From IMG/VR virus record IMGVR_UViG_3300021964_000012, positions 186,001 through 250,000 of that record: a DNA stretch of 64,000 nucleotides. The stretch is one strand, 5' to 3'. Shown here piece after piece: positions 927 through 41,940 of the stretch; position 1 is the stretch's first letter, and the number at the start of each line of letters is the position of its first letter. The position numbers and the translations under genes are program-made. The notes beneath the pieces are model-generated. The model had not been told where the DNA came from. It searched no databases and saw only the letters and a list, made by a program, of their open reading frames with translations.

Positions 927-2126
927 ATGTCTATTCCTACTAATAATTTATACAATTTTGTAGCCCAGGCCTTAGAAAACAGGTATCTGATAAAATACTT
1001 TTATCCCTGGGGACAAAAAGGATTTGCAAATATTACCTGTAATGATGAGGACAAACATCCTAATTACTTCAGTGACCTCTTATTGGATAAGCCTACTGTG
1101 ATGTGTCACGACCAGGAACCATTGGATTTTGACTTATACAACGATAATGCCCTTAGTGAACAAATACACAACATGAATCCACATATTTTACGAGAATACG
1201 AAGGTCACAAAACTGATAAAAGCAGACGTAACTCTTGGCACGATTTAAATCTTAGATGGCATCTACCTAACGATAGCAGTAACTTTTGGGTTCTATTACA
1301 TAGTGAACTGAATTCTCCTGAAATTGCAAAGTATGAAAACACAGGTTTGTTTAAATGTGCGTATTGGTGGGCACATGCACCTATTGCAATTGATTGGTTT
1401 AGATTTGCTCGTTATGATAACAGACTAAAACGACAAAGTCAAGACATAAAGGCAAACTTTTTACTCTATGCTCGAGAAACTACAGGAAAACGTGCATATA
1501 GGAAAAATTTTTTAACACAATTAAAAAATACAGATAGTGTGCAACTAGGTAGTTTTAACAAATATCCTATATCTAGCAATAGCAGTGCAATATACGACCC
1601 AGACGACTTTGCATACACAAACTGTAGTATTGTATTAGAAACTGTAAATGATAGAATACATCTTACAGAGAAAACACTTCGTCCACTTGCATGTGGACAT
1701 CCTTTCTTGTTGGTAAACGGTCACGGCGCCTTAGAAAAAATAAGGTCGTATGGATTCAAGACATTCCATCCATTCCTTGATGAAAATTACGATCTAGAAC
1801 CAGATCGAGACAAACGTATGGCAATGGTAATAGCAGAAATCGACAGAATAGACACCTCAAGTGAAAAGTATCAACAGTGGATATGGAACGGTTGCCAAGA
1901 AATTGCGGACTATAACAAACGTTTATTCTTTGATGATAAATTTATATGGCGTGTTAAGACTGAACTTCAGCGTACTGTTAGAGAACACGGTATGCCAACT
2001 CTTACACATAAAAGATTACGTAAAATATCTGCTATGATGTCACGAGAATATAGATTAAGTATGGATCAGACCAAAAGACGCAGACGTGCAGAACTATATC
2101 TAAAGTTAAAATCTTCTTCTGTATAG
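927..2126 (+). CDS. Hypothetical protein with a GT10/fucosyltransferase-like C-terminal motif
   Basis: SIVLET...LTEKTLRPLACGHPF...GFKTF resembles the SENx..YxTEK motif region of GT10-like proteins. It lies next to ugd and a sulfotransferase. Confidence 0.45.
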   Translation: MSIPTNNLYNFVAQALENRYLIKYFYPWGQKGFANITCNDEDKHPNYFSDLLLDKPTVMCHDQEPLDFDLYNDNALSEQIHNMNPHILREYEGHKTDKSRRNSWHDLNLRWHLPNDSSNFWVLLHSELNSPEIAKYENTGLFKCAYWWAHAPIAIDWFRFARYDNRLKRQSQDIKANFLLYARETTGKRAYRKNFLTQLKNTDSVQLGSFNKYPISSNSSAIYDPDDFAYTNCSIVLETVNDRIHLTEKTLRPLACGHPFLLVNGHGALEKIRSYGFKTFHPFLDENYDLEPDRDKRMAMVIAEIDRIDTSSEKYQQWIWNGCQEIADYNKRLFFDDKFIWRVKTELQRTVREHGMPTLTHKRLRKISAMMSREYRLSMDQTKRRRRAELYLKLKSSSV

Positions 2127-2729
2127 TTCATAATCTTCTTCAATATAATTTTCTATATAGGTTTTATTTTGTGCAAACCATTTGTTATACTCAATGGTAA
2201 ATTGTGTGGTATATCTACTGGTATTTTCCTGCATCCATTTAATGTCTATACCACTTAATGCACTTAGTATGTGTCTTAGTTGTCGCATATCGCCTGTACT
2301 GAACCAATTGTCAATGTTAATAGGTGCATTTTTAATAAAAACATGCTGAGGCACAAAATGCACCAGCAGGTCAACTTGATTAGGTGTGAATTCTTTTGGT
2401 AGTTGTTTACCAAGAAACCAATTGCCAATATCTTCAACTGTAAATTTGTACTGGTATTTTGCACTAGTTCCATAGGCAAATGCACTCTTAAGTCTTCCAT
2501 AAGGTTCACGTAGGATAGTGAATGTATAAGGAAAATCAATCTTACCATCCCGAGTTGCCATTTGTGCAGCCCATGCGGCAATGGTTTGTGTAGCACATTT
2601 TGGAATGTTCACAAACAAGAAATTGTCAACAGTTGGTTTGCTACAATGATATTTTGCTGTTGCAGTTTGAAATCTGTCAAAAAATCTAAATTGTAAGTTG
2701 TCACTTACCTTAGATAACAGATACTTCAC
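2106..2729 (-). CDS. Sulfotransferase family protein
   Basis: FVNIPKCATQTI (5'-PSB-like), FTILREPYGRLKSAF (3'-PB-like) and HFVPQ. Confidence 0.75.
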   Translation of the reverse strand: MKYLLSKVSDNLQFRFFDRFQTATAKYHCSKPTVDNFLFVNIPKCATQTIAAWAAQMATRDGKIDFPYTFTILREPYGRLKSAFAYGTSAKYQYKFTVEDIGNWFLGKQLPKEFTPNQVDLLVHFVPQHVFIKNAPINIDNWFSTGDMRQLRHILSALSGIDIKWMQENTSRYTTQFTIEYNKWFAQNKTYIENYIEEDYELYRRRF

Positions 2730-3058
2730 TATTTTTTAGCTTTGCCTACTGCTTGTGCACCAAAAAATGCTGCCACAATAGCCGCAACTGATACAAAGTA
2801 TACTGCTGCCATATCACCTAATATCTTAGCAGCTTGATCCATGCCAATTATATTTGCTATTAGTACTATTGCAGGATATAGTAACATACCAAACAGTGCA
2901 AACCATGCCATGCTACGTTGTGCATCACGCATAGCATCTGCATCTTCTAGTTCTTTGCGTTTGAACTCTAGATACATTGCCTGTTCTTCTTCAGTTACTT
3001 TTCCATCACCGTTTGTATCTGCAGGATGAAAACCTGCTTGTTTAATTTCTTCTGCCAT
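2729..3058 (-). CDS. EF-hand-loop membrane protein with 2 TM segments, possibly holin-like
   Basis: Canonical 12-residue EF loop DTNGDGKVTEEE followed by two hydrophobic helices. It has its own TAAATA promoter at 3084-3089. Confidence 0.5.
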   Translation of the reverse strand: MAEEIKQAGFHPADTNGDGKVTEEEQAMYLEFKRKELEDADAMRDAQRSMAWFALFGMLLYPAIVLIANIIGMDQAAKILGDMAAVYFVSVAAIVAAFFGAQAVGKAKK

Positions 3059-3086
3059 TCTAGCTCTCCAATGGTTAACTTTCTAT

Positions 3087-3620
3087 TTAGTTTGCTAATG
3101 GGTTGTCCAAAGCCCTTTGTATTTTACGCATAAGTCTATCTTCTAGTTCTTTAGTATCGCGATTTACTGTTTCTCTTAAACTATCTCGTTTAGTTTCAAA
3201 TCTACTTTCAGCATCGGTTATCATATTACGCACATCATCTACACTTTTACGAACCATGTCTTCAGTTCTATCTGCTTGTTGCTCAATACGCAGTATGTCA
3301 TCACGTAATCCGCCTTTAATATCACGTGTATATTCCACAGTGTCTTCCATTTTGGATTCCATGATTTGCATACGTTTGTCATATGCATTGATTTTTGCTT
3401 CATATTCTTCTTGTTGTTCAACAAACTCTATAGCTTGTTCAACCTTTTGATACATTAGAAAGCCACCATATAATGCACCAAGCACACTACCAATAACTGC
3501 AACAAGAGCAGACATTGACATAAAACTCACTTTAAAACCAAGGATACGAAACTCTTTATTTTTAAGGTTTTCTATACCCTCTTCGATATTTTCAAGTTCA
3601 TCTCCTAAATTTTTAGCCAT
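3087..3620 (-). CDS. Single-TM coiled-coil protein, last gene of the pilin-like operon
   Basis: Hydrophobic segment MSALVAVIGSVLGALYGGFLMY followed by a long charged heptad region. RBS GGAG. Confidence 0.6.
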   Translation of the reverse strand: MAKNLGDELENIEEGIENLKNKEFRILGFKVSFMSMSALVAVIGSVLGALYGGFLMYQKVEQAIEFVEQQEEYEAKINAYDKRMQIMESKMEDTVEYTRDIKGGLRDDILRIEQQADRTEDMVRKSVDDVRNMITDAESRFETKRDSLRETVNRDTKELEDRLMRKIQRALDNPLAN

Positions 3621-3632
3621 GTTCTCTCCAAA

Positions 3633-4082
3633 CTACTTTACAGTTTTTTCAATTTTAACATTATTCTTAAGTTTGTTTTTAAGTTGCAGTTCTCGTAACT
3701 TTTTTAGTTCTTGTTCCAGTTTCAAAACTTCTAGTCTTTTCTTTTTAAGCTCTAACTGGTATAGTGTATTACAGTTTATACGTTCTTTAGGACCGTCTAA
3801 TGGTACAGTTATTCTTGCATAAACACCTATATCTTTGGTACTGTTGCCTACGGTTGTATTGTCGTCAAAAGGACTTTGATAGTTATCAATGATGCCAGTC
3901 ACACCAAATTCCAAGTTGGTACTACCACCGATAGCATTTTGGCAATCTAAATCGCCTGCTTTGAATTTATCACTGGAAAAGTTGCTAGATGCGTTTGGTA
4001 ATTGAAGATTTAATGAACTACTGTTAGCGAATGCATAGTTGGATAAAATTGTTAAGATTAATAATAATAAAAAATTTTTCAT
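3633..4082 (-). CDS. Exported protein with a Cys-flanked amphipathic beta-hairpin and C-terminal coiled coil
   Basis: Sec signal ending AFA; C...TNLEFGVTGII...DIGVYARITVPL...C; then a Leu/Lys/Glu heptad tail. Confidence 0.55.
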   Translation of the reverse strand: MKNFLLLLILTILSNYAFANSSSLNLQLPNASSNFSSDKFKAGDLDCQNAIGGSTNLEFGVTGIIDNYQSPFDDNTTVGNSTKDIGVYARITVPLDGPKERINCNTLYQLELKKKRLEVLKLEQELKKLRELQLKNKLKNNVKIEKTVK

Positions 4083-4084
4083 GC

Positions 4085-4468
4085 CTATTCATGCTTGAAT
4101 CTAGAACATATTTTTGAAGAAATGGTTGAAGATCTTAAATCTTCAGTTCTTATCTTCGACCTACTACATATATATTCAGCCTTGTATTTGTCAATTTCTC
4201 TTATATAAACATCTACTTCAGTACGTTCTAAATATTTTATGTTCAATATTGTATATTGAGACACAAATGGTATAGGTCTCCAGTCCTTGTCAAACACTCC
4301 TATCTCATAATAGTCCACATCATTCCTTTTGTTGAAAATTTCCATACGAGTAACCAAGAGGTCATCCATATAAGCATATTTCCACTTAGGATAGGTTGGT
4401 GTCATCTCATGACCAAAACTGCCATGTGAAAACAATATCAACCATAATATTATGAAATATTTATACAT
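4085..4468 (-). CDS. Exported single-Ig-domain PapD-N-like pilus chaperone homologue
   Basis: Signal peptide, then MTPTYP..., MEIFN, YEIGVFDKDW, PF..TILNIKYLERTEVDVYI. This follows the PapD N-domain pattern (PtR, l.l.N, F..P.l..l...q.v.i). There is no second domain. Confidence 0.5.
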   Translation of the reverse strand: MYKYFIILWLILFSHGSFGHEMTPTYPKWKYAYMDDLLVTRMEIFNKRNDVDYYEIGVFDKDWRPIPFVSQYTILNIKYLERTEVDVYIREIDKYKAEYICSRSKIRTEDLRSSTISSKICSRFKHE

Positions 4469-4972
4469 CTATTGGGCTACACAAACTGCCTCAACATTTG
4501 CAGTATAGTTTCCACCTGGAAATGCTTTGTTACCGCCATATGTTGCAATCGAAGTTGATTTGAACCAAGTTGATCCAGTTGCAGTTAAATCATACTGTGT
4601 TGTCTGTCCAAATGTGGTTTTGTTTGTGTCATAGCTTGCCATACCAGTTGCATCACTTACTGAACTTACACTTGTTGATCCTGTCCATGTTACAGTGTCA
4701 CCAAGTGAAGGACTTGTACTAAATGATGTTGGTGTTGTAATCTGTGCATAATATGCATCAGCAAGTGTTACATCATATCTAACTATAGGTTCTACACCAC
4801 CATCTGATGCTGACGTTGTAAGTGTGTAAGCATTAGGGTTACCATATGTTCCTGGTGTGTCTGTTGTTATAACACACCGTGACTGTACAGTTCCACTGAT
4901 TGGTACATCAACTGCTTGTGCCGAAAATGCAAATAAACTCATAGCAATAAAAATTGTTGCTTTTTTGAGCAT
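4469..4972 (-). CDS. Fimbrial/Csu (spore-coat-U-like) pilin-like exported protein
   Basis: Signal ending AQA; N-terminal V.ISGTVQSRC strand; Thr/Ser/Gly-rich beta body; C-terminal PGGNYTANVEAVC (G.Y.a.v pilin-type last strand). Confidence 0.6.
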   Translation of the reverse strand: MLKKATIFIAMSLFAFSAQAVDVPISGTVQSRCVITTDTPGTYGNPNAYTLTTSASDGGVEPIVRYDVTLADAYYAQITTPTSFSTSPSLGDTVTWTGSTSVSSVSDATGMASYDTNKTTFGQTTQYDLTATGSTWFKSTSIATYGGNKAFPGGNYTANVEAVCVAQ

Positions 4973-4983
4973 GTTTCTTTCTC

Positions 4984-5874
4984 CTATTTGTACTGCTGAG
5001 AAACCATTTTCTCATGCAATATTTGTTGAGCTAGGCCATTCCTAAGACCTGCTTTGTTCTCTGGTAGTTTAGCATCTACCAATCTAGTTGTTTCTTTGTA
5101 CTGTCCGCCTGGAATAGTTGCAGTAAGATATTGATTACTAACTGCTACATCCATTGCTCTATTCATCTGTTCTATTCTTTGATTTTCAGCAAATAGAGCT
5201 GCGGCATCTGTAGCACTCATTAGTTTTTGCAATCTATACTTTCGTTTTGCTTCTTCTGCGGCTTCTTTCTCTTCTTCTTCTTTTTCGCTTAATCTTTCTT
5301 CGTTTTCTTCTATAGATACTTTTTCTTCACTGCTTAAATTTACGTATTCATCTTGTGTTGCATCATACAATTCTACTTTTACTTCTGGAATAACTGGAAC
5401 TGGCGTTTTGTATCCAGGACAGTTAGGACTAAACTGAGGATCATAACAAGGATCAACTTTGTAACTGTAGATCACAGTTGGTTCTTCAATAGTACCTGTA
5501 CCCTCTACTTCTATTGATCCATCGCCCCATGCTTCTCTTGGAATATCTCCTATTCCAATAACCTTACGTACTTCTATTCCTCCTGGTGCGCCTGACCAGT
5601 CTTCTGTATCTCTAAAAACGTATCCAGTTCCATTTGCATTTTTGTTCTGTACGTGAACTTTCATGTCGTCTTCTGTTTTCTTGTTAGGTGTGTATTTGTA
5701 AAACACACCATTGATGTCTAAACCTGGAGGAGCAGGCAATATGTTAGGCATACTCCAACTCAAACCGTTTTGTGCCGCGTTTGGAGTTGTACCATAATAT
5801 GGTGCAATGTTATCAGAGTAACAATAGTAGGGATAAAATCCCACCAATACTCCAAGTAGCAGCTTTTTTAACAT
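4984..5874 (-). CDS. Exported multidomain protein (beta domain, DPCxDPxxxPxCPGY motif, acidic linker, helical tail)
   Basis: Signal-like N-terminus; Cys pair in DPCYDPQFSPNCPGY; Glu-rich coiled coil. Overlaps the upstream gene by about 62 nt. Confidence 0.55.
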   Translation of the reverse strand: MLKKLLLGVLVGFYPYYCYSDNIAPYYGTTPNAAQNGLSWSMPNILPAPPGLDINGVFYKYTPNKKTEDDMKVHVQNKNANGTGYVFRDTEDWSGAPGGIEVRKVIGIGDIPREAWGDGSIEVEGTGTIEEPTVIYSYKVDPCYDPQFSPNCPGYKTPVPVIPEVKVELYDATQDEYVNLSSEEKVSIEENEERLSEKEEEEKEAAEEAKRKYRLQKLMSATDAAALFAENQRIEQMNRAMDVAVSNQYLTATIPGGQYKETTRLVDAKLPENKAGLRNGLAQQILHEKMVSQQYK

Positions 5875-6364
5875 CTACTTGTTCTTCCTTACCGTTCTTT
5901 TCGTGTTTCTGTTTATCTTCATGTGATTCCCAACCAATCTTGGCTGCTTCTCCAATTTTGCCTTCATATGGACAAGGAGTACCTGCCATCATCATTGCAT
6001 CAAACACTTTTGCATCTTGACACATAACGGAAACTGCGGCAACTTTCATGCCCATGTCATACAATGTCTTTGCATTTTTTAATCTTATACAGTTGTCTTC
6101 TGTAAATGTGGTACCTGCACTTATACCTAATATCTGTGTTTGTACTGCACCAGCAACACCTATTGTACATAAATCGCTATTGTTGCCTGTGTTAAACTGC
6201 GGCGATATAGCACTTGGTGGTGGCGATTTTACAGTTGTTTCCATATTTCCTTCAGTAATAATTTTACTGTTCGTTGTGCTTTCTGTTACTATTGTTTCTG
6301 CAAGTACATTGGTCATAGTCATAAAAAACACAATTATTGTGCAAATAAATAATTTTTTAATCAT
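5813..6364 (-). CDS. Exported Cys-rich protein with beta-hairpin and C-terminal TM, first gene of the operon
   Basis: Start moved to MIKKLF (AGGA upstream). Signal ending VLA; SPPPSAISP; C-TIGVAGAVQTQILGISAGTT-...-C; MCQD; AGTPCP; hydrophobic C-terminus. Confidence 0.6.
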   Translation of the reverse strand: MIKKLFICTIIVFFMTMTNVLAETIVTESTTNSKIITEGNMETTVKSPPPSAISPQFNTGNNSDLCTIGVAGAVQTQILGISAGTTFTEDNCIRLKNAKTLYDMGMKVAAVSVMCQDAKVFDAMMMAGTPCPYEGKIGEAAKIGWESHEDKQKHEKNGKEEQVDVKKAATWSIGGILSLLLLL

Positions 6365-6391
6365 TGATTCTTTTCCTAGATAATACACGAC

Positions 6392-6437
6392 TATTTATTT
6401 GCATAAAAACATTAGTTTCTTACTGCAAATATTTATA
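6392..6437 (-). promoter_or_regulatory. Tandem T4-like late promoters (TAAATA at 6392-6397, TATAAATA at 6430-6437) for the pilin-like operon
   Basis: Motif read on the minus strand just upstream of the 6364 start. The same motif precedes many late genes in the window. Confidence 0.65.
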
Positions 6438-6463
6438 GATCTCATGATTTGTTTTTCGTACGA

Positions 6464-6522
6464 ACAAAATTTTGACGGTCACAATAATTTGTACCAAAAT
6501 TAGGTACAAAATTTTGACGGTC
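6464..6522. repeat. Two perfect 17-bp direct repeats ACAAAATTTTGACGGTC (6464-6480, 6506-6522) flanking an 8-bp inverted repeat
   Basis: Read directly. Period is 42 bp; each copy contains the palindrome CAAAATTTTG; TTTGTACC (6488-6495) and GGTACAAA (6503-6510) are inverted. Confidence 0.9.
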
Positions 6523-6525
6523 TGT

Positions 6526-6747
6526 CTAATAGATTTTGGTTTTTTTTGGGTCAACTCGACGTGGTTCGCATACTGCGATATAATTTTGAGTTTTTACTTC
6601 ACCTTCGCCTGCACGTGAATTTGGCACACTGGGTTGGTTGTTGAGTCTTTCTGCAAAATACTTACAACTATCAATGCTGTGAAAGTACATATTTTGATTT
6701 ACTATATTTTTTCCAAGGTAGACTATTAGTAAAAACACATGAGTCAT
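6526..6747 (-). CDS. Small hydrophobic-N-terminus, 2-Cys hypothetical protein
   Basis: Hydrophobic start, F.SIDSC and AVC. Same layout as 7281-7481. Confidence 0.5.
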   Translation of the reverse strand: MTHVFLLIVYLGKNIVNQNMYFHSIDSCKYFAERLNNQPSVPNSRAGEGEVKTQNYIAVCEPRRVDPKKTKIY

Positions 6748-7217
6748 GAGTACATTATAGCACTAATAATACCACCAGCAATAACAATAAGTATACCGAA
6801 TCCCATTAATGCCATCTTTATATCTGACCAAAGTTCTTCATTTTCTTTTTTGGCTTTGATACGTGCTTGACGTTGTGCTTCTTTGTGTTCAGCAATACGT
6901 CTTGCACGTTCTTCGAGTATGCCTGCCCAAGTTCCTGGGCCAAATCGTAGATTGACAAGTGTGGCTATTTCTTGTAGTTTTTCAGCAGCTAGTTTTTGAT
7001 CAATTGTTTCTTGTGCAATGTGAGCAGTGTCAAATTGTTCTTTGACACCCATCTGGCGTTTGTTAACTTTTTTGTCTAACTCTTGTTTTCCACGTAATAG
7101 ATTGTCGATATGACCGCCTATCTCGCTTATGTCTTGACAGGTTTGAATATTTGATTTTATAAAGTCAACACTACTTTTTACCAGGGCAATCCCTGCTAAT
7201 ATTTCTGCAACTGGCAT
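6744..7217 (-). CDS. Helical protein with C-terminal TM anchor
   Basis: Coiled-coil body and C-terminal ALMGFGILIVIAGGIISAIMY. Has a structured leader and its own late promoter (7269-7274). Confidence 0.55.
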   Translation of the reverse strand: MPVAEILAGIALVKSSVDFIKSNIQTCQDISEIGGHIDNLLRGKQELDKKVNKRQMGVKEQFDTAHIAQETIDQKLAAEKLQEIATLVNLRFGPGTWAGILEERARRIAEHKEAQRQARIKAKKENEELWSDIKMALMGFGILIVIAGGIISAIMYS

Positions 7218-7280
7218 ATCATTCCTCTGTTCCTCCAGGTAGGAACCTATCTAGCTCCTGGACAGCTATATTTAGCGGTA

Positions 7281-7481
7281 CTAAGGAATTAAATTCTTAT
7301 CAGATAATATACACACGGCACTGGTATTTTTTGGAAACCGATTACTGACATCTTTGTATTTTTTTGTTGCAATGTTACACACTTCTTCAGTTTCAAACAC
7401 ACCAATAAACTCTACGTGTGCATCTACTGTCAGTAGGTGAACTATAACTAATATCCAAACCATAACATTATATTTACTCAA
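7281..7481 (-). CDS. Small 2-Cys hypothetical protein, probable paralogue of 6526-6747
   Basis: Hydrophobic N-terminus, FETEEVC and AVC. Confidence 0.45.
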   Translation of the reverse strand: MSKYNVMVWILVIVHLLTVDAHVEFIGVFETEEVCNIATKKYKDVSNRFPKNTSAVCILSDKNLIP

Positions 7482-7484
7482 AAA

Positions 7485-7509
7485 AATAGCACCCGAAGGT
7501 GCTACTTTT
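7485..7509 (-). terminator. Intrinsic terminator after the porin gene
   Basis: TAGCACC-CGAA-GGTGCTA hairpin followed by a U-tract on the minus strand. Confidence 0.8.
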
Positions 7510-7526
7510 ATAATGTTTATTGTGTA

Positions 7527-8513
7527 TTAGAAAGAAGCGGCAATTTTAAATTGTAAAACTGAACCATCATCATCTGTTGATGCTTCTCCACCGTTCTTGT
7601 ACTCATAGTCTGTGTAGTTTACATAACCAGTTAAACCTGGTGCAATAGCATGTTTAAGTTCAACCATGTTTTGCTTTAAGTTTTCTTTTTCAGAACCTGA
7701 TACATCTAATGCATCTTCTGATTCCATTGTTGAAACTGCAACAGTTGTAGTGTCATTAATTGCATAACTTGCACCACCGCCTACTGTTTCAATGTCCTCG
7801 TCTGCACCTTCTACAGTACTCATTGCACCAATAAGTGTTACTGCACCAAATGATACTTTAGCACCAATGCTTTGTGACTCATTGTCAATTGCACCTGATA
7901 CTTCTTGCATGCCTTTTGTGTAACCAATTTTGATGTTTTCATGAGTGTAACTTGCACCATATGCAGTTGAATCAGTTGCGCCTGTTGCGCCTGAATCCAT
8001 GTAACTTACACCAGCTTGTATTCCGCCGAAACTTGGAGAAATGTATGATACTTTGTCAAGATCTGCACCATATGTTTTTTCACCTGCATTTGATTGAATT
8101 GAAGCATTGGTGTATGTGCCAGTTACTTCTTCGTCCATGATGTCTTGCTCACCAATACCAAAGTTGTCTGTAACTGCATCGTTACCGCCTAGTATTAGTT
8201 TACCAGCAGCACCTGAAATATAAATTGATGATTCGTCAATGGTTGCATTTGTGTCTGCAACTGTTGCCATTTCAACAACCATACCATAGTTTAGGCCACT
8301 ATCAGTTTTGTTTGAGAAAGTAAATTTAATTTCATTATCTGTGTTGCCCATTGAATCACCTTTTTGTGAAGCAATTTGTGAATCAACATCTTTATAATAA
8401 AATTCGGAACTACCAGAAATAGTAAATTCTGGCTTATTAACTGTGGCTTCTTGTGCCAAAGCAGTTGTACTCAGCAGTGTAGCTATCACTGCCAACGGGG
8501 CTAGTTTTTTCAT
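7527..8513 (-). CDS. Gram-negative porin (alphaproteobacterial type)
   Basis: Signal ending ALA; alternating beta strands; N-terminal FTISGSSEFYY; GLNYG; YISPSFGGIQAGVSY; C-terminal Phe (IAASF). Confidence 0.85.
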   Translation of the reverse strand: MKKLAPLAVIATLLSTTALAQEATVNKPEFTISGSSEFYYKDVDSQIASQKGDSMGNTDNEIKFTFSNKTDSGLNYGMVVEMATVADTNATIDESSIYISGAAGKLILGGNDAVTDNFGIGEQDIMDEEVTGTYTNASIQSNAGEKTYGADLDKVSYISPSFGGIQAGVSYMDSGATGATDSTAYGASYTHENIKIGYTKGMQEVSGAIDNESQSIGAKVSFGAVTLIGAMSTVEGADEDIETVGGGASYAINDTTTVAVSTMESEDALDVSGSEKENLKQNMVELKHAIAPGLTGYVNYTDYEYKNGGEASTDDDGSVLQFKIAASF

Positions 8514-8546
8514 AGTCTTCTCTTATGTCCTTAAGGTTTAATTTTA

Positions 8547-8594
8547 AATGTAGGAAATATATAGAATATATATTTCGTTCCTACATTATATTTA
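8547..8594 (-). promoter_or_regulatory. Porin late promoter (TAAATA, 8589-8594) and long 5'-UTR hairpin
   Basis: AAUGUAGG/CCUACAUU and GAAAUAUAUA/UAUAUAUUUC can pair in the leader. Confidence 0.55.
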
Positions 8595-8602
8595 GTCAAC
8601 AG

Positions 8603-8881
8603 TTATCTACTCTCTAAATTTTTAATTCGTTTTTCTAGTAGATCAATCTTCTTTGTGATTTTTGGATAACGTTTACGCCACAAGTCTTCTGGCTCTTGTA
8701 ACCATGTCCATCCATACTTTTGTGCAATGTTCTCCATGAAGGTGTCAAACTTACTCACTGCCCATATTGCCATACGTGTATCTTTGAACCAAAACAAAAA
8801 TGCCGCACCTGCTAAACTTCCTACTATGCCAGTATATATCCAAAGTCTATCACTTGCCATACGTTCTATCATTTCCCACAT
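8603..8881 (-). CDS. Small single-TM hypothetical protein
   Basis: LWIYTGIVGSLAGAAFLFWF followed by a basic coiled-coil tail. Confidence 0.55.
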   Translation of the reverse strand: MWEMIERMASDRLWIYTGIVGSLAGAAFLFWFKDTRMAIWAVSKFDTFMENIAQKYGWTWLQEPEDLWRKRYPKITKKIDLLEKRIKNLESR

Positions 8882-8890
8882 ATCATTCTC

Positions 8891-9247
8891 CTATTTGTAA
8901 AGTATTGGATCCCAATCTTTATTATCTTGTTCTTTGTATTTACAGATTCTGTCAGACATTATTTGATAGTAACTATCAATCTCGCCTCCCCATTTACCAA
9001 CAAGATGTTCTAGTGCTTGTTCGCAAAAAGTAAAGTTACCTTTTTGATAATTTTCATAAAACTTAATGTGTAGGTTTGCATACTCATTGATTTTATTGAT
9101 TTCTGATACGGGAATTTTTTCAATTAGACAGTATGCAGTTGTAGCAGGAAGATCTGGATTGCTTTTAAACTTCATGTCTTCTAAAGGCAGTACTGTATAC
9201 TTTGACTTCATTGCTTCTGCATTGTCTTTGCCAATAATTATGTTCAT
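8891..9247 (-). CDS. Stand-alone helical domain resembling the C-terminal TPR-like tail of class III adenylate cyclases
   Basis: FYENYQKGNF..C...L......DSYYQIM.DRI..Y......WD pattern. RBS GAAGGAG 6 nt upstream. Confidence 0.45.
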   Translation of the reverse strand: MNIIIGKDNAEAMKSKYTVLPLEDMKFKSNPDLPATTAYCLIEKIPVSEINKINEYANLHIKFYENYQKGNFTFCEQALEHLVGKWGGEIDSYYQIMSDRICKYKEQDNKDWDPILYK

Positions 9248-11057: not shown

Positions 11058-13418
11058 TTAGAATGTCCAAGTATAATTGATACTTGCATTCTTATCACCG
11101 CTTTGACTTACGGCACCACCTACCTTAATCTTAGTATTAGTATCTAAGTTAAAGTTGTAGTTTGCTTTCAAGTAACCATTTATGTTTGTTGGTAACTTGA
11201 ATTTGTGTTCAGTGTAGTTAAGGTTGCCTGTTGAATCAACACTAGTAGGCACATTAGCAGTAACATCACCGTTTAGTAACACAGGATGTACACCAGCACC
11301 TAAGTCTAAGTTGCCTTGCTTGTATCCAAGCTCCCCCCATATACCAAATTGATCACTAACTTTTGTTATTAAACCTTTTTGGAAGTTTGTTTTAACATGC
11401 ATGGCACTTGCTCTTGCAGTAAAGCTACCTTTCTTGTATGTAACAACATTGTCAACAATGTTAGTGTTATCAACTTCACCCCATATGCCTGAGAAACCAA
11501 TCCATGGATTGCTATTCAACTTTGACAGATGCACACTGTAAGTTGTTCCATTGCCAGTTACTGCATTAGCATTGGTCCACATGTTTTGTCCTAGTGTGAA
11601 CTGTTGTGTTTTTGTATCGGCGCCAGCAATAACACCATTTTCAGTTGTAGTATTAAAACTAGAGATACTGTTGAACATTGTTGCACCATCAGAATCAATA
11701 TTTGTTTGTGCAAGGTTAACTGCATAGTTTCTTCCTATGCCGTCAAGTGCTTGACCAGTAACATCACCAATGTCAAATCCGTATACACTACCATTAAGTT
11801 TTAAACCGTTCATGGTAAGTGTGCCAATTGGTTGGAATGCTTTGTTGATATCAATTATTGTACCACCAGCAAATGATTGACCTGTATCAGTAAGTGCTTG
11901 AGCAGCTTGTGCATCACTTAGGTAACTCCAAGAATTTTGTATCATATTGATCGCAGTTCCTGCGGCTATTGTAGTTCCATCTAGCCTACTCATAAAAAAC
12001 GTAAGTTTATTATCATTACTGTCTCCGCCACCGGCACTGTTTGCCCATGTTACAAGATACTTGTAACCATCATCTGCTTGAAAAATGTTTACAGTACTAC
12101 CATTTATATCAGTCAAACCATTGGAAGTAGCAATTGATCTAACATCTGTCATAAAGTTAGTGAGTATGTTTTGATAAGCCGCAACGTATTTGTTATCAGA
12201 TGTTTTTAACAAAAACTGGTGACTGTTGTGTGGATTGTTCATAGTACTTGAATCACCACCACTGACCAATATGTCTGTTTTACCATCACCGTTAATATCA
12301 AAGAACCTTGGTTTATATGTACTTGAAGTATTGTTTTGATAACCAATTAGTGTAGAGCTTGTTGTATCAGTAAACACTCCACTACCGTTGTTTTGCATAA
12401 ACTGTATTTCGCTTAATTTGTCATCACCATTGTTTACTTTTTTGCTGAATACAATAACGTCTGCATATCCATCTTCATTAAAGTCGTGGTTGGCAATTTC
12501 AACACTATGATCTATACCGCTGGTACTAAATGCTGGAAGGTCTCTTTCATGTGTAAATTTAAGTACACCGCCTGTCCAGTCAACACTGTACATTTTAGTT
12601 GTGTTACTATCACTGCAAGTGCCGCTTACTACTGCACACTGAGCATCAGTAAGTATTACCTCATTGTTGTTACCGTTGTTCATAAAATTGCCTATTGCAA
12701 CTGCTGAACCACCGTATCTGAGATCACCTGTATTGCCTAATGCATCAACGTGTGTGGTAAATCCATTCACTTGGTTGTTGAGTGCAATAGTTGTATTTTT
12801 ATTTTTTAGATCCGGCATGATAATATCAATATAACCATCATTGTTCAAGTCACCAACATCACTACCATGTGACCAAACGTCTAAGGTTGGAATACTAACT
12901 TTGGTAAAGTTTGATCCATTATTAGTAAAGAAGGTAGCAGGACCAAAGTGTCTCATATCAGTACTGTGCGAAACAAACATATCTTTTCTGCCAGTTTTAA
13001 AGAAGTCAGCAAAATGAACATTAGGCTCTGTGCCCATTATTTCATTGTCGGTACCTGAAAACCACTGTGCAGTCTTATCAACCAATGAACCATTTTCAAA
13101 AGACAGCATGCTTAGTTTAGTGTTGCTCCATGTACCAGCTGTAGCAGGTTGTGTCTTCCTACCAGCAACTATAAAATCATCTGCATAACCATCACCATCA
13201 ATATCTTCTACAAATGTGTCACCAACGAACCATGCATTATCGTTACCACCTGCCATTGGATCAACTGTTACTTGTTGAACTGGCGGGGTATAATATAAGA
13301 CTGGACTTGGAGGATTTGGTGTGTAACCACCTCCGCCACCACCACCACCTCCGCCACAAGCGGAAAGAGCAGTTGCACCTAGTAGTGCGGCCACTATTCG
13401 AGTGTTTTGTTTTATCAT
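11058..13418 (-). CDS. Lipoprotein with FG-GAP/VCBS beta-propeller and C-terminal autotransporter-like beta-barrel
   Basis: Lipobox LSA-C, then Gly10. About six DxxxDGxxD repeats (DIDGDGYADD, DLNNDGYID, DFNEDGYAD, DINGDGKTD). Amphipathic C-terminal strands ending NYTWTF. Confidence 0.75.
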   Translation of the reverse strand: MIKQNTRIVAALLGATALSACGGGGGGGGGGYTPNPPSPVLYYTPPVQQVTVDPMAGGNDNAWFVGDTFVEDIDGDGYADDFIVAGRKTQPATAGTWSNTKLSMLSFENGSLVDKTAQWFSGTDNEIMGTEPNVHFADFFKTGRKDMFVSHSTDMRHFGPATFFTNNGSNFTKVSIPTLDVWSHGSDVGDLNNDGYIDIIMPDLKNKNTTIALNNQVNGFTTHVDALGNTGDLRYGGSAVAIGNFMNNGNNNEVILTDAQCAVVSGTCSDSNTTKMYSVDWTGGVLKFTHERDLPAFSTSGIDHSVEIANHDFNEDGYADVIVFSKKVNNGDDKLSEIQFMQNNGSGVFTDTTSSTLIGYQNNTSSTYKPRFFDINGDGKTDILVSGGDSSTMNNPHNSHQFLLKTSDNKYVAAYQNILTNFMTDVRSIATSNGLTDINGSTVNIFQADDGYKYLVTWANSAGGGDSNDNKLTFFMSRLDGTTIAAGTAINMIQNSWSYLSDAQAAQALTDTGQSFAGGTIIDINKAFQPIGTLTMNGLKLNGSVYGFDIGDVTGQALDGIGRNYAVNLAQTNIDSDGATMFNSISSFNTTTENGVIAGADTKTQQFTLGQNMWTNANAVTGNGTTYSVHLSKLNSNPWIGFSGIWGEVDNTNIVDNVVTYKKGSFTARASAMHVKTNFQKGLITKVSDQFGIWGELGYKQGNLDLGAGVHPVLLNGDVTANVPTSVDSTGNLNYTEHKFKLPTNINGYLKANYNFNLDTNTKIKVGGAVSQSGDKNASINYTWTF

Positions 13419-40210: not shown

Positions 40211-40240
40211 AAGGCATCTTTAGGCAAACATAGGCAAACA
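40211..40240 (+). repeat. Perfect tandem 10-mer TAGGCAAACA x2 (a third AGGCA lies one period upstream) directly before the dnaE-like ATG
   Basis: 40221-40230 and 40231-40240 are identical. AGGCA starts at 40212, 40222 and 40232. Confidence 0.85.
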
Positions 40241-41940
40241 TGAAAACAGAAATAGAACAGATACAATTATTATTAGAACAATTTAGAAGACCAACTCCCG
40301 AAGGCGAAGAATATCAAAACAGACTAGCAGAAGAATTTGAAATTATACTTCAGCAACGTTTTACAGATTACTTTCTCAAAATAAGACTCATACTTGATCT
40401 CAACGAAGACATACCACACATGACCAGAGGCAGTGCTGGTAGCAGTTTGGTTTGCTATCTCATGGGCATAACTGATGTTGATCCAATTGAATGGAACATA
40501 CCACTAGCAAGATTTTTAAATCCATACAGAGATGACTTGCCTGATGTGGATATTGATATACCTCATCACAAACAAGAACTTGCAATGCAACGTGTGTTTG
40601 ACAAATGGCCAACACAGAGTGCTAGGATATCAAACTATGTGCTTTACAGAGAGAAGAGTGCAAAACGCGAAGCTGCCAAACGCCTTGGAGCAAAAGGCAG
40701 ACTGCCAAAAGATATAGACTACGCAAAACTAGGCGTTGACGAACAAGAAGCACGTCGTATTGAACGCAAACTCATGGGCAAAAAACGTTGTATCAGCAAA
40801 CACTGTGGTGGTGTGCTGGTTTTTGATCGTCCACTACCTAAAAGCCTGTTCCGTGATGACAATCTTATCTTGCTTGACAAAAACGAAGTAGAGGATTTGG
40901 AACATCTAAAAGTAGACATACTTGCAAACAGAGGATTATCACAGTTACTAGAAATAGATCCTCACACAAGACTGGATGCATATCCAAAACAGGATGAACG
41001 TGTTGCTGATTTGTTGTGTAGAGGTGATGTACTTGGTGTAACACAAGGTGAGTCGCCAACTATGAAGAGACTGTTTCGTGCATTGCAACCAACCGGAGTT
41101 GAGGACTGTGTGTTTGCCAGTGCATTAGTGCGTCCAGTTGCTATGGAAGGCAGACGCAAGGCCAGTTGGTTCCGTGACTGGAGTGAAAAAGGCATACAAA
41201 AGAATGCAATAGTATATGAAGATGATGCCATACATAAAATAATGAAATTGATTGGCATATCACCATACGAAGCAGATATGTATCGTCGTGCTTTTGCAAA
41301 AAAGAATGAAGAAAAGATGATGCAGTTTATGGCACGCTTAGGTGATCATCCAGACAAGCATGATATCTATGAACAAATGCAATCACTAAGTGGGTTTGGC
41401 TTGTGTAGAGCACACGCAGTTAATTTAGGCAGACTTATATGGGCATTAGCATATCACAAAGTATACAATCCAAAAGAGTTTTGGCGTGCTTGTTTAAAAC
41501 ACTGCCAAGGATCATATGCACGTTGGGTATATCGTAACGAAGCAAAACGTGCTGGTTGGGATCTGCGTGAACTAGGTTTTGACAACTGGATTACAGAAGA
41601 TCCAGTTGAGAGTTTCAAACAACATGGTGCATGGAATAGTCCTGGCTTTTTGCCAAACATGGGATTGCAAAATTTATTCTTAGACAAGTTTCAGTTTGCA
41701 GGTATAATTGCCGCCAGCAGAGTGTTTAAAAGTGATATAAAAAGTTATATACACTTCATCACACTAGGTGTTGGTGAAGGTCGCTATGTGGATCTTGTTG
41801 TTGACAAACCAGTGAAATACGGTAAAGGAACTGTAGTCTTAGGAGAAGGAGAACTACACAGCAGAGACAACAGCGAGTATCTCAAAGTAAAACGCAAATC
41901 AGTAAAAGTGATGTCAATTGACGACTATGTTCAGAGCTAA
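40240..41940 (+). CDS. dnaE: PHP-less, compact DNA polymerase III alpha (DnaE-like)
   Basis: RGSAGSSLV, RFLNP.RDDLPDVDID, KHCGGV, KVDIL, GVTQGES and GFGLCRAHA. All three catalytic Asp are present. No PHP domain; 566 aa. Confidence 0.85.
   Translation: MKTEIEQIQLLLEQFRRPTPEGEEYQNRLAEEFEIILQQRFTDYFLKIRLILDLNEDIPHMTRGSAGSSLVCYLMGITDVDPIEWNIPLARFLNPYRDDLPDVDIDIPHHKQELAMQRVFDKWPTQSARISNYVLYREKSAKREAAKRLGAKGRLPKDIDYAKLGVDEQEARRIERKLMGKKRCISKHCGGVLVFDRPLPKSLFRDDNLILLDKNEVEDLEHLKVDILANRGLSQLLEIDPHTRLDAYPKQDERVADLLCRGDVLGVTQGESPTMKRLFRALQPTGVEDCVFASALVRPVAMEGRRKASWFRDWSEKGIQKNAIVYEDDAIHKIMKLIGISPYEADMYRRAFAKKNEEKMMQFMARLGDHPDKHDIYEQMQSLSGFGLCRAHAVNLGRLIWALAYHKVYNPKEFWRACLKHCQGSYARWVYRNEAKRAGWDLRELGFDNWITEDPVESFKQHGAWNSPGFLPNMGLQNLFLDKFQFAGIIAASRVFKSDIKSYIHFITLGVGEGRYVDLVVDKPVKYGKGTVVLGEGELHSRDNSEYLKVKRKSVKVMSIDDYVQS

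What the first reader, a model, noticed from the sequence alone, without database searches (positions are those of the whole stretch)
3087..6437. Late-expressed, usher-less pilin/chaperone operon: candidate new phage-encoded fibre assembly system
Seen: six co-oriented, tightly packed genes behind tandem T4-type late promoters. Five carry Sec signals and one is a TM-anchored coiled coil. 4469-4972 looks like a Csu/fimbrial pilin, and the next gene is a single-domain PapD-N-like chaperone. Known: chaperone-usher pili need a two-domain chaperone and an ~800-aa usher, and neither is here. Two genes (3633-4082, 5813-6364) instead share a Cys-flanked amphipathic beta-hairpin plus helix layout. Inference: these could oligomerise into an outer-membrane pore (CsgG-like logic) replacing the usher, with 4984-5874 as tip/adhesin and 3087-3620 as inner-membrane anchor. 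Exported products cannot join a cytoplasmic virion before lysis, so the fibre would be built on the infected cell (aggregating new hosts, blocking superinfection) or added at lysis. The pilin's two Cys lie on the first and last strands, which might allow intersubunit disulfides.
Basis: partly seen in the sequence, partly recalled or inferred. Interest (0 to 1): 0.85.

Follow-up and report, generated by a model that had tools for sequence, protein, structure and literature searches.

The report
Usher-less pilin–chaperone triad in phages
A marine phage carries, inside a late-expressed gene string, a three-gene set (pilin-like subunit, one-domain chaperone-like protein, small hairpin-plus-coiled-coil protein) that also exists as a stand-alone operon in bacteria and in unrelated Vibrio phages, always without the usual outer-membrane 'usher', so it may be an undescribed way of building a surface fibre.

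Summary
The six minus-strand genes are real. They keep the same order in about 80 related viral contigs and sit behind a T4-type late promoter.

They are two modules, not one machine.

1. Triad g4-g3-g2 (4469-4972, 4085-4468, 3633-4082).
- It recurs in the same order in four types of Vibrio phage.
- It also recurs as a stand-alone operon in bacterial chromosomes, for example Hansschlegelia quercus. No usher is nearby in any case.
- g4 looks like a chaperone-usher pilin by fold search and carries a donor-strand-like N-terminal motif.
- g3 is a one-domain Ig fold closest to PapD_N (TM 0.71-0.74; hhalign P=0.001).
- g2 has a disulfide-closed hairpin plus a coiled coil. In some bacteria it is fused to an OmpA peptidoglycan-binding domain.

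2. g6, g5 and g1 recur without the triad in pelagiphages HTVC115P and Mosig, in Mosig next to a holin. They are therefore not pilus parts.

g2 and g6 are not homologous. No Pfam or NCBIfam family and no paper found covers the triad.

My best reading is an usher-less, donor-strand-type envelope fibre, made late on the infected cell (confidence about 0.5). Fibre formation, export route and benefit to the phage are untested.

The parts
6430..6437 (-). T4-type late promoter box TATAAATA upstream of g6. An imperfect second copy, AATAAATA, lies at 6392-6399.
   Evidence: The box is present within 150 nt upstream of g6 in 39 of 68 relatives and is absent upstream of g5 to g1.
6488..6510 (-). Terminator-like hairpin that closes the preceding gene. 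It lies within a pair of exact 17-bp direct repeats (6464-6480 and 6506-6522).
   Evidence: Two copies were found; 0.03 are expected by chance.
5813..6364 (-). g6: signal peptide, Thr/Ser/Pro-rich linker, four-Cys domain, acidic linker, short C-terminal hydrophobic tail (GG..LLLLL). It belongs to the pelagiphage-shared module, not to the triad.
   Evidence: Alignment A3. PHROG 20531, E=9.6e-15. Homologues are in HTVC115P, Mosig, HTVC202P, HTVC023P and Roseobacter phages. More than 8000 clusters at 90% identity. Not homologous to g2.
4984..5874 (-). g5: secreted 296-aa protein with a beta-rich N-terminal half containing a DPCYDPQFxPxCPGY motif, an acidic linker, and a helical C-terminus ending LHxxMVxMQY. 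Its start overlaps the g6 3' end by 62 nt.
   Evidence: Alignment A5. No family, structure or atlas lead. Weak C-terminal match to HTVC115P gp53, which sits in the same position after the g6 homologue (E=0.0019 among 150 ORFs).
4469..4972 (-). g4: pilin-like secreted Ig-fold subunit. The mature N-terminus is VDVPIxGxVQSRC (donor-strand-like). The C-terminus is GGxYTAxVxAxCIAQ. Cys33 and Cys164 are invariant.
   Evidence: A1. AF2 pLDDT 83.5, with the conserved N-terminal 12 residues left unstructured. Top Foldseek PDB hits are PapG pilin domain, CfaB, CsuA/B, FimF/G and Caf1, at E=3e-3 to 2e-2. Atlas neighbours are SCPU, DUF4402 and CS1, TM 0.52-0.58. Homologues in Vibrio phages and bacteria.
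4085..4468 (-). g3: single-domain Ig-like, PapD_N-like periplasmic protein. The mature N-terminus HEMxPTYP is invariant, and there are two invariant Cys.
   Evidence: A2. AF2 pLDDT 82. Atlas structural neighbours are PapD_N-only clusters, TM 0.71-0.74. Foldseek against PDB gives only generic Ig folds; Caf1M ranks 15. hhalign against E. coli chaperone N-domains gives P=0.0011 over 102 columns.
3633..4082 (-). g2: small secreted protein with a disulfide-closed beta-hairpin (Cys47 to Cys104) followed by a C-terminal coiled-coil helix. It is the third obligatory member of the triad.
   Evidence: A4. PHROG 37374. 361 clusters at 50% identity at E<=1e-3. Fused to OmpA_C (PF00691) in P0202 and P0259. 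PDB profile hits are coiled coils only.
3087..3620 (-). g1: N-in single-TM protein with a periplasmic coiled coil and a conserved C-terminal NPLAN. It is part of the pelagiphage-shared module and is less tightly linked to the triad, since insertions occur between g2 and g1.
   Evidence: Homologue HTVC115P gp49, E=2.8e-32; Mosig_00200, E=4.4e-4.
6526..7217 (-). g7 (6744-7217, a coiled coil with a C-terminal TM segment) and a 73-aa ORF (6526-6747). They are frequent but mobile neighbours of the module.
   Evidence: Present in 36 and 30 of 80 loci respectively, upstream, downstream or inverted.
2729..3058 (-). g0: small membrane protein with a weak EF-hand-like N-terminus, 28 nt downstream of g1. 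It may belong to the same transcript.
   Evidence: EF-hand_5, E=0.004, below the cut-off. Present near the module in 21 loci. No minus-strand terminator was found after g1.

Best explanation
The region is one late transcription unit made of two separate envelope modules.

Module A, the triad g4-g3-g2, belongs to a widespread and so far unnamed three-component system of Proteobacteria that several phage lineages have acquired. Its parts are:
- g4, a Sec-exported pilin-like Ig-fold subunit. It has an N-terminal phi-x-F/I-x-G-x-phi-x-x-x-C strand, like the donor strand of type 1 pilins, and a C-terminal G-x-Y-x-x-x-V-x-x-x-C strand.
- g3, a one-domain PapD_N-like periplasmic partner.
- g2, a small protein with a disulfide-closed beta-hairpin and a coiled coil.

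Proposed mechanism (inferred):
1. g3 caps g4 in the periplasm by donating its C-terminal strand.
2. g4 subunits then polymerise by donor-strand exchange.
3. Oligomeric g2 at the outer membrane and cell wall takes the place of the usher, as platform or conduit.

Module B (g6, g5, g1, often with g7) is a separate set of exported and membrane proteins shared with pelagiphages. Its function is unknown, and in some relatives it lies next to lysis genes.

In the phage both modules are made late, so their products act in or on the envelope of the dying cell. Receptor masking, superinfection exclusion or cell-surface adhesion are the likeliest benefits. None is shown.
For: Shown:
- Six-gene synteny in about 80 contigs and a conserved late promoter only upstream of g6.
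- The triad keeps its order in Vibrio phages Brizo, K379, D82 and D56. Profile E-values: g2 2e-13, g3 1.5e-7, g4 2.6e-6.
- The triad is also in bacterial chromosomes between housekeeping genes. Examples are Hansschlegelia quercus (nadC, triad, osmC), L097 and L095 next to uvrC. The combined profile finds the bacterial pilin-likes at 1e-14 to 3e-7.
- Larger bacterial versions add a second pilin-like subunit and a two-domain subunit of about 305 aa. The larger subunit keeps the C-terminal motif but lacks the N-terminal motif, as tip adhesins do.
- Fold evidence for g4 comes, and for g3.
- The N-terminal motif aligns with the donor strand of E. coli pilins.
- g2 is fused to OmpA_C in two bacterial cluster representatives.
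- Module B is independent of the triad.
Against: - No sequence family hit supports the pilin or chaperone assignment (Pfam and NCBIfam are empty).
- Foldseek E-values for g4 are only 3e-3 to 2e-2, with TM at most 0.46.
- Foldseek for g3 gives generic Ig folds.
- The pilin profile comparison is not significant once signal peptides are removed (P=0.04-0.18).
- The Arg8 of classical chaperones is not conserved (PTY or PMY instead), and the second chaperone domain is missing.
- The invariant Cys33-Cys164 pair could staple a closed, non-polymerising domain.
- g4 is the most conserved of the six proteins (67% mean column identity against 56-63%). That is unusual for an exposed major pilin.
- No structure or oligomer model of g2 could be made.
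- Only 64 kb of a 328-kb contig was visible, so an usher elsewhere in the phage genome is not excluded.
Confidence: 0.5

Rival explanations
1. The triad makes a non-polymerising periplasmic or outer-membrane complex. g4 is a closed, disulfide-stapled beta-sandwich that binds a host envelope target such as a receptor, a porin or peptidoglycan. g3 and g2 hold or position it. In phages it would work as a receptor mask or superinfection-exclusion device, like T5 Llp or Cor.
For: - The first-to-last-strand Cys pair is invariant, and g4 is highly conserved.
- In all four Vibrio phage types the triad directly follows a large fibre-like protein without a signal peptide (phrog_10818). It is itself followed by a small lipoprotein. 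This is the usual position of receptor-blocking genes (own knowledge of T5 llp and oad).
- The sequence support for true pilin membership is weak.
Against: - The conserved N-terminal strand motif is left unplaced by AF2.
- Multi-subunit bacterial operons include an adhesin-like two-domain subunit that lacks that motif. This is hard to explain without polymerisation.
- Stand-alone chromosomal operons in free-living bacteria have no phage receptor to mask.
Confidence: 0.25
2. The whole cluster, or module B, is part of the lysis apparatus. It would be a spanin-like or outer-membrane-disrupting system, or a lysis-timing device, for hosts where canonical Rz/Rz1 are missing.
For: - g1 has i-spanin topology: N-terminal TM segment plus periplasmic coiled coil.
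- In Mosig the g6-like, g5-like, g1-like and g7-like genes follow a GTA-type holin (PF11351, 25.8 bits).
- In many relatives the module is flanked by a T4-type lysozyme, a secreted SleB-like hydrolase and an Rz-like TM-coiled-coil protein.
- In Brizo, D56 and a prophage (L107) the triad lies 0-3 kb from the endolysin.
Against: - No lipobox ORF that could serve as an o-spanin partner was found in or around the module.
- None of those lysis genes lies within the 64-kb window.
- Bacterial triads have no lysis context.
- Late accessory genes commonly sit next to lysis cassettes without taking part in lysis (own knowledge, e.g. stx and bor in lambdoid phages).
Confidence: 0.12
3. One reading: all six genes form one fibre machine, with g6 and g2 as a composite outer-membrane pore, g5 as tip adhesin and g1 as inner-membrane anchor.
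For: The six genes are strictly linked in about 80 contigs and share one late promoter.
Against: - g6, g5 and g1 occur without the triad, and the triad occurs without them.
- g6 and g2 are not homologous.
- g5 lacks both pilin motifs.
- Insertions occur between g2 and g1.
Confidence: 0.05

Closest known systems
Archaic (sigma) chaperone-usher pili, e.g. Acinetobacter Csu; SCPU (PF05229) and DUF4402 (PF14352) subunits
   Same: The subunit is secreted, about 150 aa, with an Ig fold. CsuA/B and SCPU or DUF4402 clusters are among the nearest structural and feature neighbours of g4. The subunit gene is followed by a chaperone-like gene.
   Different: - There is no usher.
- The chaperone has one domain, not two.
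- Pfam does not hit SCPU or DUF4402.
- The disulfide links the first and last strands.
- A small hairpin-plus-coiled-coil protein is the invariant third partner.
Classical chaperone-usher pili (E. coli Fim and Pap; PapD_N PF00345, Fimbrial PF00419, Usher PF00577)
   Same: - The N-terminal motif phi-x-F-x-G-x-phi..C of the subunit lines up with the pilin donor strand.
- g3 aligns end to end with chaperone N-domains at P=0.001.
- Some homologues end in RLYWP, RLIYP or NVYYP, like the KLFYRP of the E. coli chaperones.
- Bacterial variants have a two-domain subunit without the donor motif, like a tip adhesin.
   Different: - There is no usher and no PapD_C domain.
- The invariant T-R (Arg8) of the eight E. 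coli chaperones is P-T-Y or P-M-Y here.
- There is no significant sequence match for the subunit body.
Curli (type VIII secretion; CsgG channel, CsgE, CsgF)
   Same: It is an analogy only: a fibre is exported without an usher, through an oligomer of a small outer-membrane protein.
   Different: Curli subunits are amyloid repeats, not Ig folds with donor strands. g2 (about 130 aa, not a lipoprotein) shows no similarity to CsgG. No homology test was positive.
Receptor-masking and superinfection-exclusion proteins next to receptor-binding genes (T5 Llp, phi80/T1 Cor)
   Same: These are exported phage proteins acting on the infected cell's envelope. In Vibrio phages the triad plus a lipoprotein sits directly after a large fibre-like gene.
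   Different: Llp and Cor are single small lipoproteins. Here three proteins have cellular homologues in non-phage operons. No functional test exists.
Two-component spanins (lambda Rz/Rz1, T4 PseT.3/PseT.2)
   Same: g1, and the neighbouring c10 in relatives, has the i-spanin layout of an N-terminal TM segment plus a periplasmic coiled coil. Relatives have lysis genes nearby.
   Different: No outer-membrane lipoprotein partner was found. g1 is not adjacent to a holin or endolysin in this window.

Membership tests
Chaperone-usher pilus system | An outer-membrane usher of about 800 aa (PF00577) is encoded with the subunit and chaperone | tested here: not met
   - No window ORF of 600 aa or more hits Usher.
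- None is found in the Hansschlegelia locus (ORF listing of about 7 kb around the triad), in the 18-kb L097 contig or in the L103/L104 loci.
- The Vibrio phage upstream protein of about 800 aa has no signal peptide and no Usher hit.
- The rest of the 328-kb phage contig was not visible.
Chaperone-usher pilus system | A two-domain periplasmic chaperone (PapD_N plus PapD_C) with conserved Arg8 and Lys112 | tested here: not met
   - g3 is 127 aa (about 107 mature) with one domain.
- Pfam gives no hit.
- The T-R invariant in eight E. coli chaperones corresponds to P-T-Y here.
- A basic residue is kept in the last strand (CS[KR]FK, or AKVRLYWP in Vibrio phages).
Chaperone-usher pilus system | The subunit is an incomplete Ig fold with an N-terminal donor strand | tested here: inconclusive
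   - Top Foldseek hits are all chaperone-usher pilins, but at E=3e-3 to 2e-2 and TM at most 0.46.
- The conserved N-terminal strand motif is not packed by AF2.
- The motif aligns with the pilin donor strand, but P=0.04-0.18.
- Model coordinates could not be inspected for an open groove.
PapD_N domain (PF00345) | Match to the family profile, or significant profile-profile or structural similarity | tested here: inconclusive
   - Pfam hmmscan gives no hit at E<=1.
- hhalign against eight E. coli N-domains gives P=E=0.0011, probability 20%, over 102 columns.
- Atlas structural neighbours are PapD_N clusters, TM 0.71-0.74.
- Foldseek against PDB is generic.
SCPU (PF05229) and DUF4402 (PF14352) subunits | Match to the family profile | tested here: not met
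   Pfam gives no hit for g4 or for its Vibrio and bacterial homologues. The only links are feature similarity of 0.93-0.95 and TM 0.52-0.58.
Two-component spanin | An i-spanin (N-terminal TM plus periplasmic coiled coil) paired with an outer-membrane lipoprotein gene that is embedded, overlapping or adjacent | tested here: not met
   g1 has the i-spanin layout. A scan of all minus-strand frames of 2000-9000 found no lipobox ORF.
T4-type late transcription unit | A TATAAATA box upstream of the first gene and no internal promoters | tested here: met
   An exact box lies at 6430-6437. It is conserved in 39 of 68 relatives upstream of g6 and in none upstream of g5 to g1. Expression timing itself was not measured.

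The most novel reading that the evidence does not exclude
The pilin-like, one-domain chaperone and hairpin-coiled-coil triad is a previously unrecognised donor-strand fibre pathway. An oligomer of the roughly 12-kDa g2 protein replaces the 800-aa usher as the outer-membrane assembly site. Lytic phages of SAR11-type and Vibrio hosts have captured it to put fibres on infected cells late in infection.
Probability: 0.3. Interest if true: 0.85.

Novelty: new variant of a known kind. Interest (0 to 1): 0.7.

Why it matters
Every described chaperone-usher pilus needs an usher of about 800 aa and a two-domain chaperone. A three-gene set that keeps a pilin-like subunit but replaces both would be a new minimal route for building Ig-fold polymers in the Gram-negative envelope. 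The g2 family alone has 361 clusters at 50% identity.

The set is carried by very abundant marine phages and by four Vibrio phage types. This points to a late-infection remodelling of the host surface that has not been studied.

The bacterial versions and the cultured Vibrio phages make the question directly testable. Hansschlegelia quercus is a cultured isolate, and Brizo and its relatives grow on V. campbellii BAA-1116.

Tried and rejected
Searches that gave nothing useful:
- Megablast of the region against GenBank phages found no match.
- tblastn of g4 and g5 against phages found nothing.
- Pfam, NCBIfam and PHROGs on the six proteins gave only unnamed PHROGs.
- The profile search with g6 in the 5.8-billion-protein set was saturated by close relatives and gave no annotation.
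- The atlas search for g5 gave no lead.
- PDB sequence-profile searches for g4, g3, the broad g3 family and the g2 family gave nothing, or only coiled coils.
- BFVD fold search for g3 returned unnamed phage proteins.
- Literature searches for DUF4402, spore coat protein U with phage, phage-encoded chaperone-usher, orphan or single-domain chaperones, and pelagiphage spanins found nothing on this system.

Ideas tested and dropped or left open:
- g2 and g6 as paralogues: rejected.
- The Vibrio phage upstream protein of about 800 aa as an usher: rejected. It has no signal peptide and no Usher hit.
- The N-terminal His of g3 as a copper 'histidine brace'. It is conserved in marine phages and many bacteria but replaced by Leu in Vibrio phages and L098. 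It is therefore not a core feature, and I did not pursue it.
- The first hhalign of g3 against E. coli chaperones, with the narrow alignment, was not significant (P=0.22). Only the broadened family reached P=0.001.

Full report
**What is in the window.**
- Six ORFs lie on the minus strand between 3087 and 6388. In order of transcription they are g6 (5813-6364, ATG start), g5 (4984-5874), g4 (4469-4972), g3 (4085-4468), g2 (3633-4082) and g1 (3087-3620).
- The gaps run from a 62-nt overlap (g6/g5) to 12 nt.
- g6, g5, g4, g3 and g2 start with typical signal peptides. g1 has a cytoplasmic N-terminus, one TM segment and a long coiled coil. Both points are by inspection.
- The window matches IMG/VR contig UViG_3300021964_000012 (328 kb) at 100% across the module. 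It carries phage genes: ribonucleotide reductase, DNA ligase and tail-spike-like proteins.

**Transcription signals.**
- An exact TATAAATA lies at 6430-6437(-), and an imperfect copy (AATAAATA) lies at 6392-6399.
- The box itself is not enriched in the window as a whole (8 found, 6.7 expected).
- A TATAAATA lies within 150 nt upstream of g6 in 39 of 68 relatives and upstream of none of g5 to g1.
- A terminator-like hairpin (6510-6488) separates the unit from the preceding gene. This fits one T4-type late transcription unit. Timing was not measured.

**Synteny.**
- A search with g4 returned 80 viral loci at 54-100% identity.
- tblastn and ORF clustering show g6-g5-g4-g3-g2 in the same order in essentially all loci long enough to hold them.
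- g1 usually comes next, but unrelated small genes are sometimes inserted between g2 and g1. The flanks vary freely.
- The porin upstream in this window (7527-8513; Porin_4, E=1.9e-32) is not part of the conserved set.

**Family and fold of g4 and g3.** Pfam, NCBIfam and PDB sequence searches give nothing significant for any of the six proteins. PHROGs gives only unnamed families for g2, g4 and g6.

*g4:*
- The AF2 model is confident (pLDDT 83.5) and all-beta. The invariant first 12 mature residues are left unstructured at pLDDT 57-69.
- The best Foldseek PDB matches are almost all chaperone-usher subunits (PapG pilin domain, CfaB, CsuA/B, FimF/G, Caf1). They are weak: E=3e-3 to 2e-2, TM at most 0.46.
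- The ESM atlas gives SCPU, DUF4402 and CS1 clusters as the nearest named neighbours, TM 0.52-0.58.

*g3:*
- The model (pLDDT 82) is a single Ig-like sandwich.
- Foldseek against PDB is generic (VCAM-1, DUF1425, Cu-only SOD; Caf1M ranks 15).
- The atlas structure search puts PapD_N-only clusters nearest, TM 0.71-0.74.

**The triad exists elsewhere.**
- tblastn with g2 hit 50 Vibrio phage records.
- In Brizo (T5-like, 120 kb) three consecutive ORFs are homologues of g4, g3 and g2 in the same order. Profile E-values are 2.6e-6, 1.5e-7 and 2e-13.
- The g4-like protein occurs in 179 Vibrio phage records. The four genome types examined (120, 84, 79 and 60 kb) have the same arrangement.
- In these phages the triad always follows a protein of about 800-860 aa of PHROG 10818. 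That protein has no signal peptide and no Usher hit. The triad is followed by a lipoprotein of about 55-67 aa.
- An exhaustive profile search with g2 found 361 clusters at 50% identity at E<=1e-3. Many have bacterial, high-GC composition.

| Locus | Context | Gene content |
|---|---|---|
| L095 | next to uvrC | pilin-like, chaperone-like, g2-like |
| L097 | 18-kb contig of housekeeping genes | triad (pilin-like gene frameshifted) |
| L099, Hansschlegelia quercus | nadB-nadC, triad, osmC-like | triad |
| L101, L103/L104 | bacterial chromosome | extra pilin-like subunit, a two-domain subunit of about 305 aa, one or two chaperone-like genes, g2-like |
| L107 | prophage | triad beside an M15 endolysin |

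- In L101 and L103/L104 the 305-aa subunit keeps the C-terminal G-x-Y-x-x-x-V-x-x-C motif but lacks the N-terminal motif. In L103/L104 the g2-like gene is fused to OmpA_C.
- A profile built from g4 plus the Vibrio proteins finds the bacterial pilin-likes at 1e-14 to 3e-7.
- None of these loci has an usher. None of the proteins has a Pfam or NCBIfam family.

**Direct tests of chaperone-usher membership.** I fetched eight chaperones and 19 pilins of E. coli K-12.
- The broadened g3 family aligns end to end with the chaperone N-domains at P=E=0.0011, probability 20% (independent run). The narrow family did not (P=0.22).
- The invariant T-R (Arg8) of the E. coli set is P-T-Y or P-M-Y here.
- Several homologues end in RLYWP, RLIYP or NVYYP, recalling KLFYRP.
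- For the subunit, the only aligned stretch is the mature N-terminus. phi-x-F/I-x-G-x-phi-x-x-x-C in the triad lines up with phi-x-F-x-G-x-phi-x-x-x-x-C in pilins, which is their donor strand. The score is not significant without the signal peptide (P=0.04-0.18).
- The system therefore fails usher and two-domain-chaperone membership and is inconclusive for the subunit. It works like, but is not a member of, the known chaperone-usher classes.

**g6, g5 and g1 are a different module.**
- g6 has strong homologues in pelagiphages HTVC115P, Mosig EXVC030M, HTVC202P, HTVC023P and HTVC033P, and in Roseobacter phages. The g6 family has more than 8000 clusters at 90% identity.
- In HTVC115P the g6 homologue is followed by a protein whose C-terminus matches g5 (E=0.0019 among 150 ORFs), and further on by a clear g1 homologue (E=2.8e-32).
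- In Mosig the g6-like gene directly follows a GTA-type holin. It is followed by a large secreted acidic protein, a weak g1 match (E=4.4e-4) and a tail-anchored coiled-coil protein like g7.
- Neither of these phage loci has the triad.
- g6 and g2 share only their signal peptides in hhalign.
- In relatives of the window the module often adjoins a T4-type lysozyme, a secreted SleB-like hydrolase and an Rz-like protein. None of these is in this 64-kb window, and no lipobox partner for g1 was found.

**Interpretation.**
- Shown: the region is a composite late unit, and its core triad is a conserved, usher-less, three-gene system shared by bacteria and at least two unrelated phage groups.
- Inferred: g3 caps g4 and g4 polymerises by strand exchange. 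g2 provides the envelope platform; it has a hairpin closed by Cys47-Cys104 and a coiled coil, and is sometimes fused to a peptidoglycan-binding domain.
- One-domain chaperones end with the presumed donor strand as a free C-terminus. That could fit a groove stapled at one end by the Cys33-Cys164 bond. This is speculation.
- Points against a classical exposed pilus: g4 is the most conserved of the six proteins, and all fold scores are modest.
- The benefit to the phage is unknown. Receptor masking, exclusion, adhesion and a lysis-linked role are all open.

Noticed in passing
window 7527-8513 (-): The phage encodes a full-length Gram-negative porin (Porin_4, E=1.9e-32, with a signal peptide and a C-terminal Phe) about 1.1 kb upstream of the module. 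It is not conserved with the module in relatives.
   Followed up: partly
window 6464-6480 and 6506-6522 (-): Two exact copies of the 17-mer GACCGTCAAAATTTTGT lie 42 nt apart (0.03 expected by chance). Each is followed by a short hairpin. They sit between the preceding gene and the late promoter and could be a terminator pair or a regulatory site.
   Followed up: partly
window 4085-4468 (-), residue 20 of g3: The first mature residue is a nearly invariant His (HEMxPTYP). It is also His in many bacterial homologues (HAIFPG, HSHSPT, HGILSP) but Leu in Vibrio phages. An N-terminal His recalls copper 'histidine brace' proteins. This was not tested.
   Followed up: partly
window 5813-5874 (-): The g6 3' end, which encodes its hydrophobic tail, and the g5 5' end, which encodes its signal peptide, overlap by about 62 nt in different frames. 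The overlap is conserved (median -62 nt in 72 loci).
   Followed up: partly
L083 4944-5321 (Vibrio phage Brizo), L085 and L086: The g2-like ORF is not annotated, or is annotated in the wrong frame, in the deposited Vibrio phage records Brizo, D82 and D56. It spans the gap between annotated genes.
   Followed up: yes
L097 8227-8594: The pilin-like gene of this bacterial triad is split into two frames. This is either a frameshift, a pseudogene or an assembly error.
   Followed up: no
window 11058-13418 (-) and 40240-41940 (+): There is a 786-aa FG-GAP repeat protein. There is also a DNA polymerase III alpha-type fragment on the opposite strand, in a patch of reversed GC skew. The polymerase type is unusual for a T4-like phage and fits a large, atypical genome (328-kb contig).
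   Followed up: no
L107 9028-9600: In a prophage, the triad (in the order chaperone-like, g2-like, pilin-like) is followed by a small outer-membrane beta-barrel-like protein ending in ..FGYRF.
   Followed up: no
L002 10408 onward (HTVC115P gp46): A gene annotated as an RTX toxin-activating lysine-acyltransferase lies a few genes downstream of the g6/g5/g1-like set in this pelagiphage.
   Followed up: no
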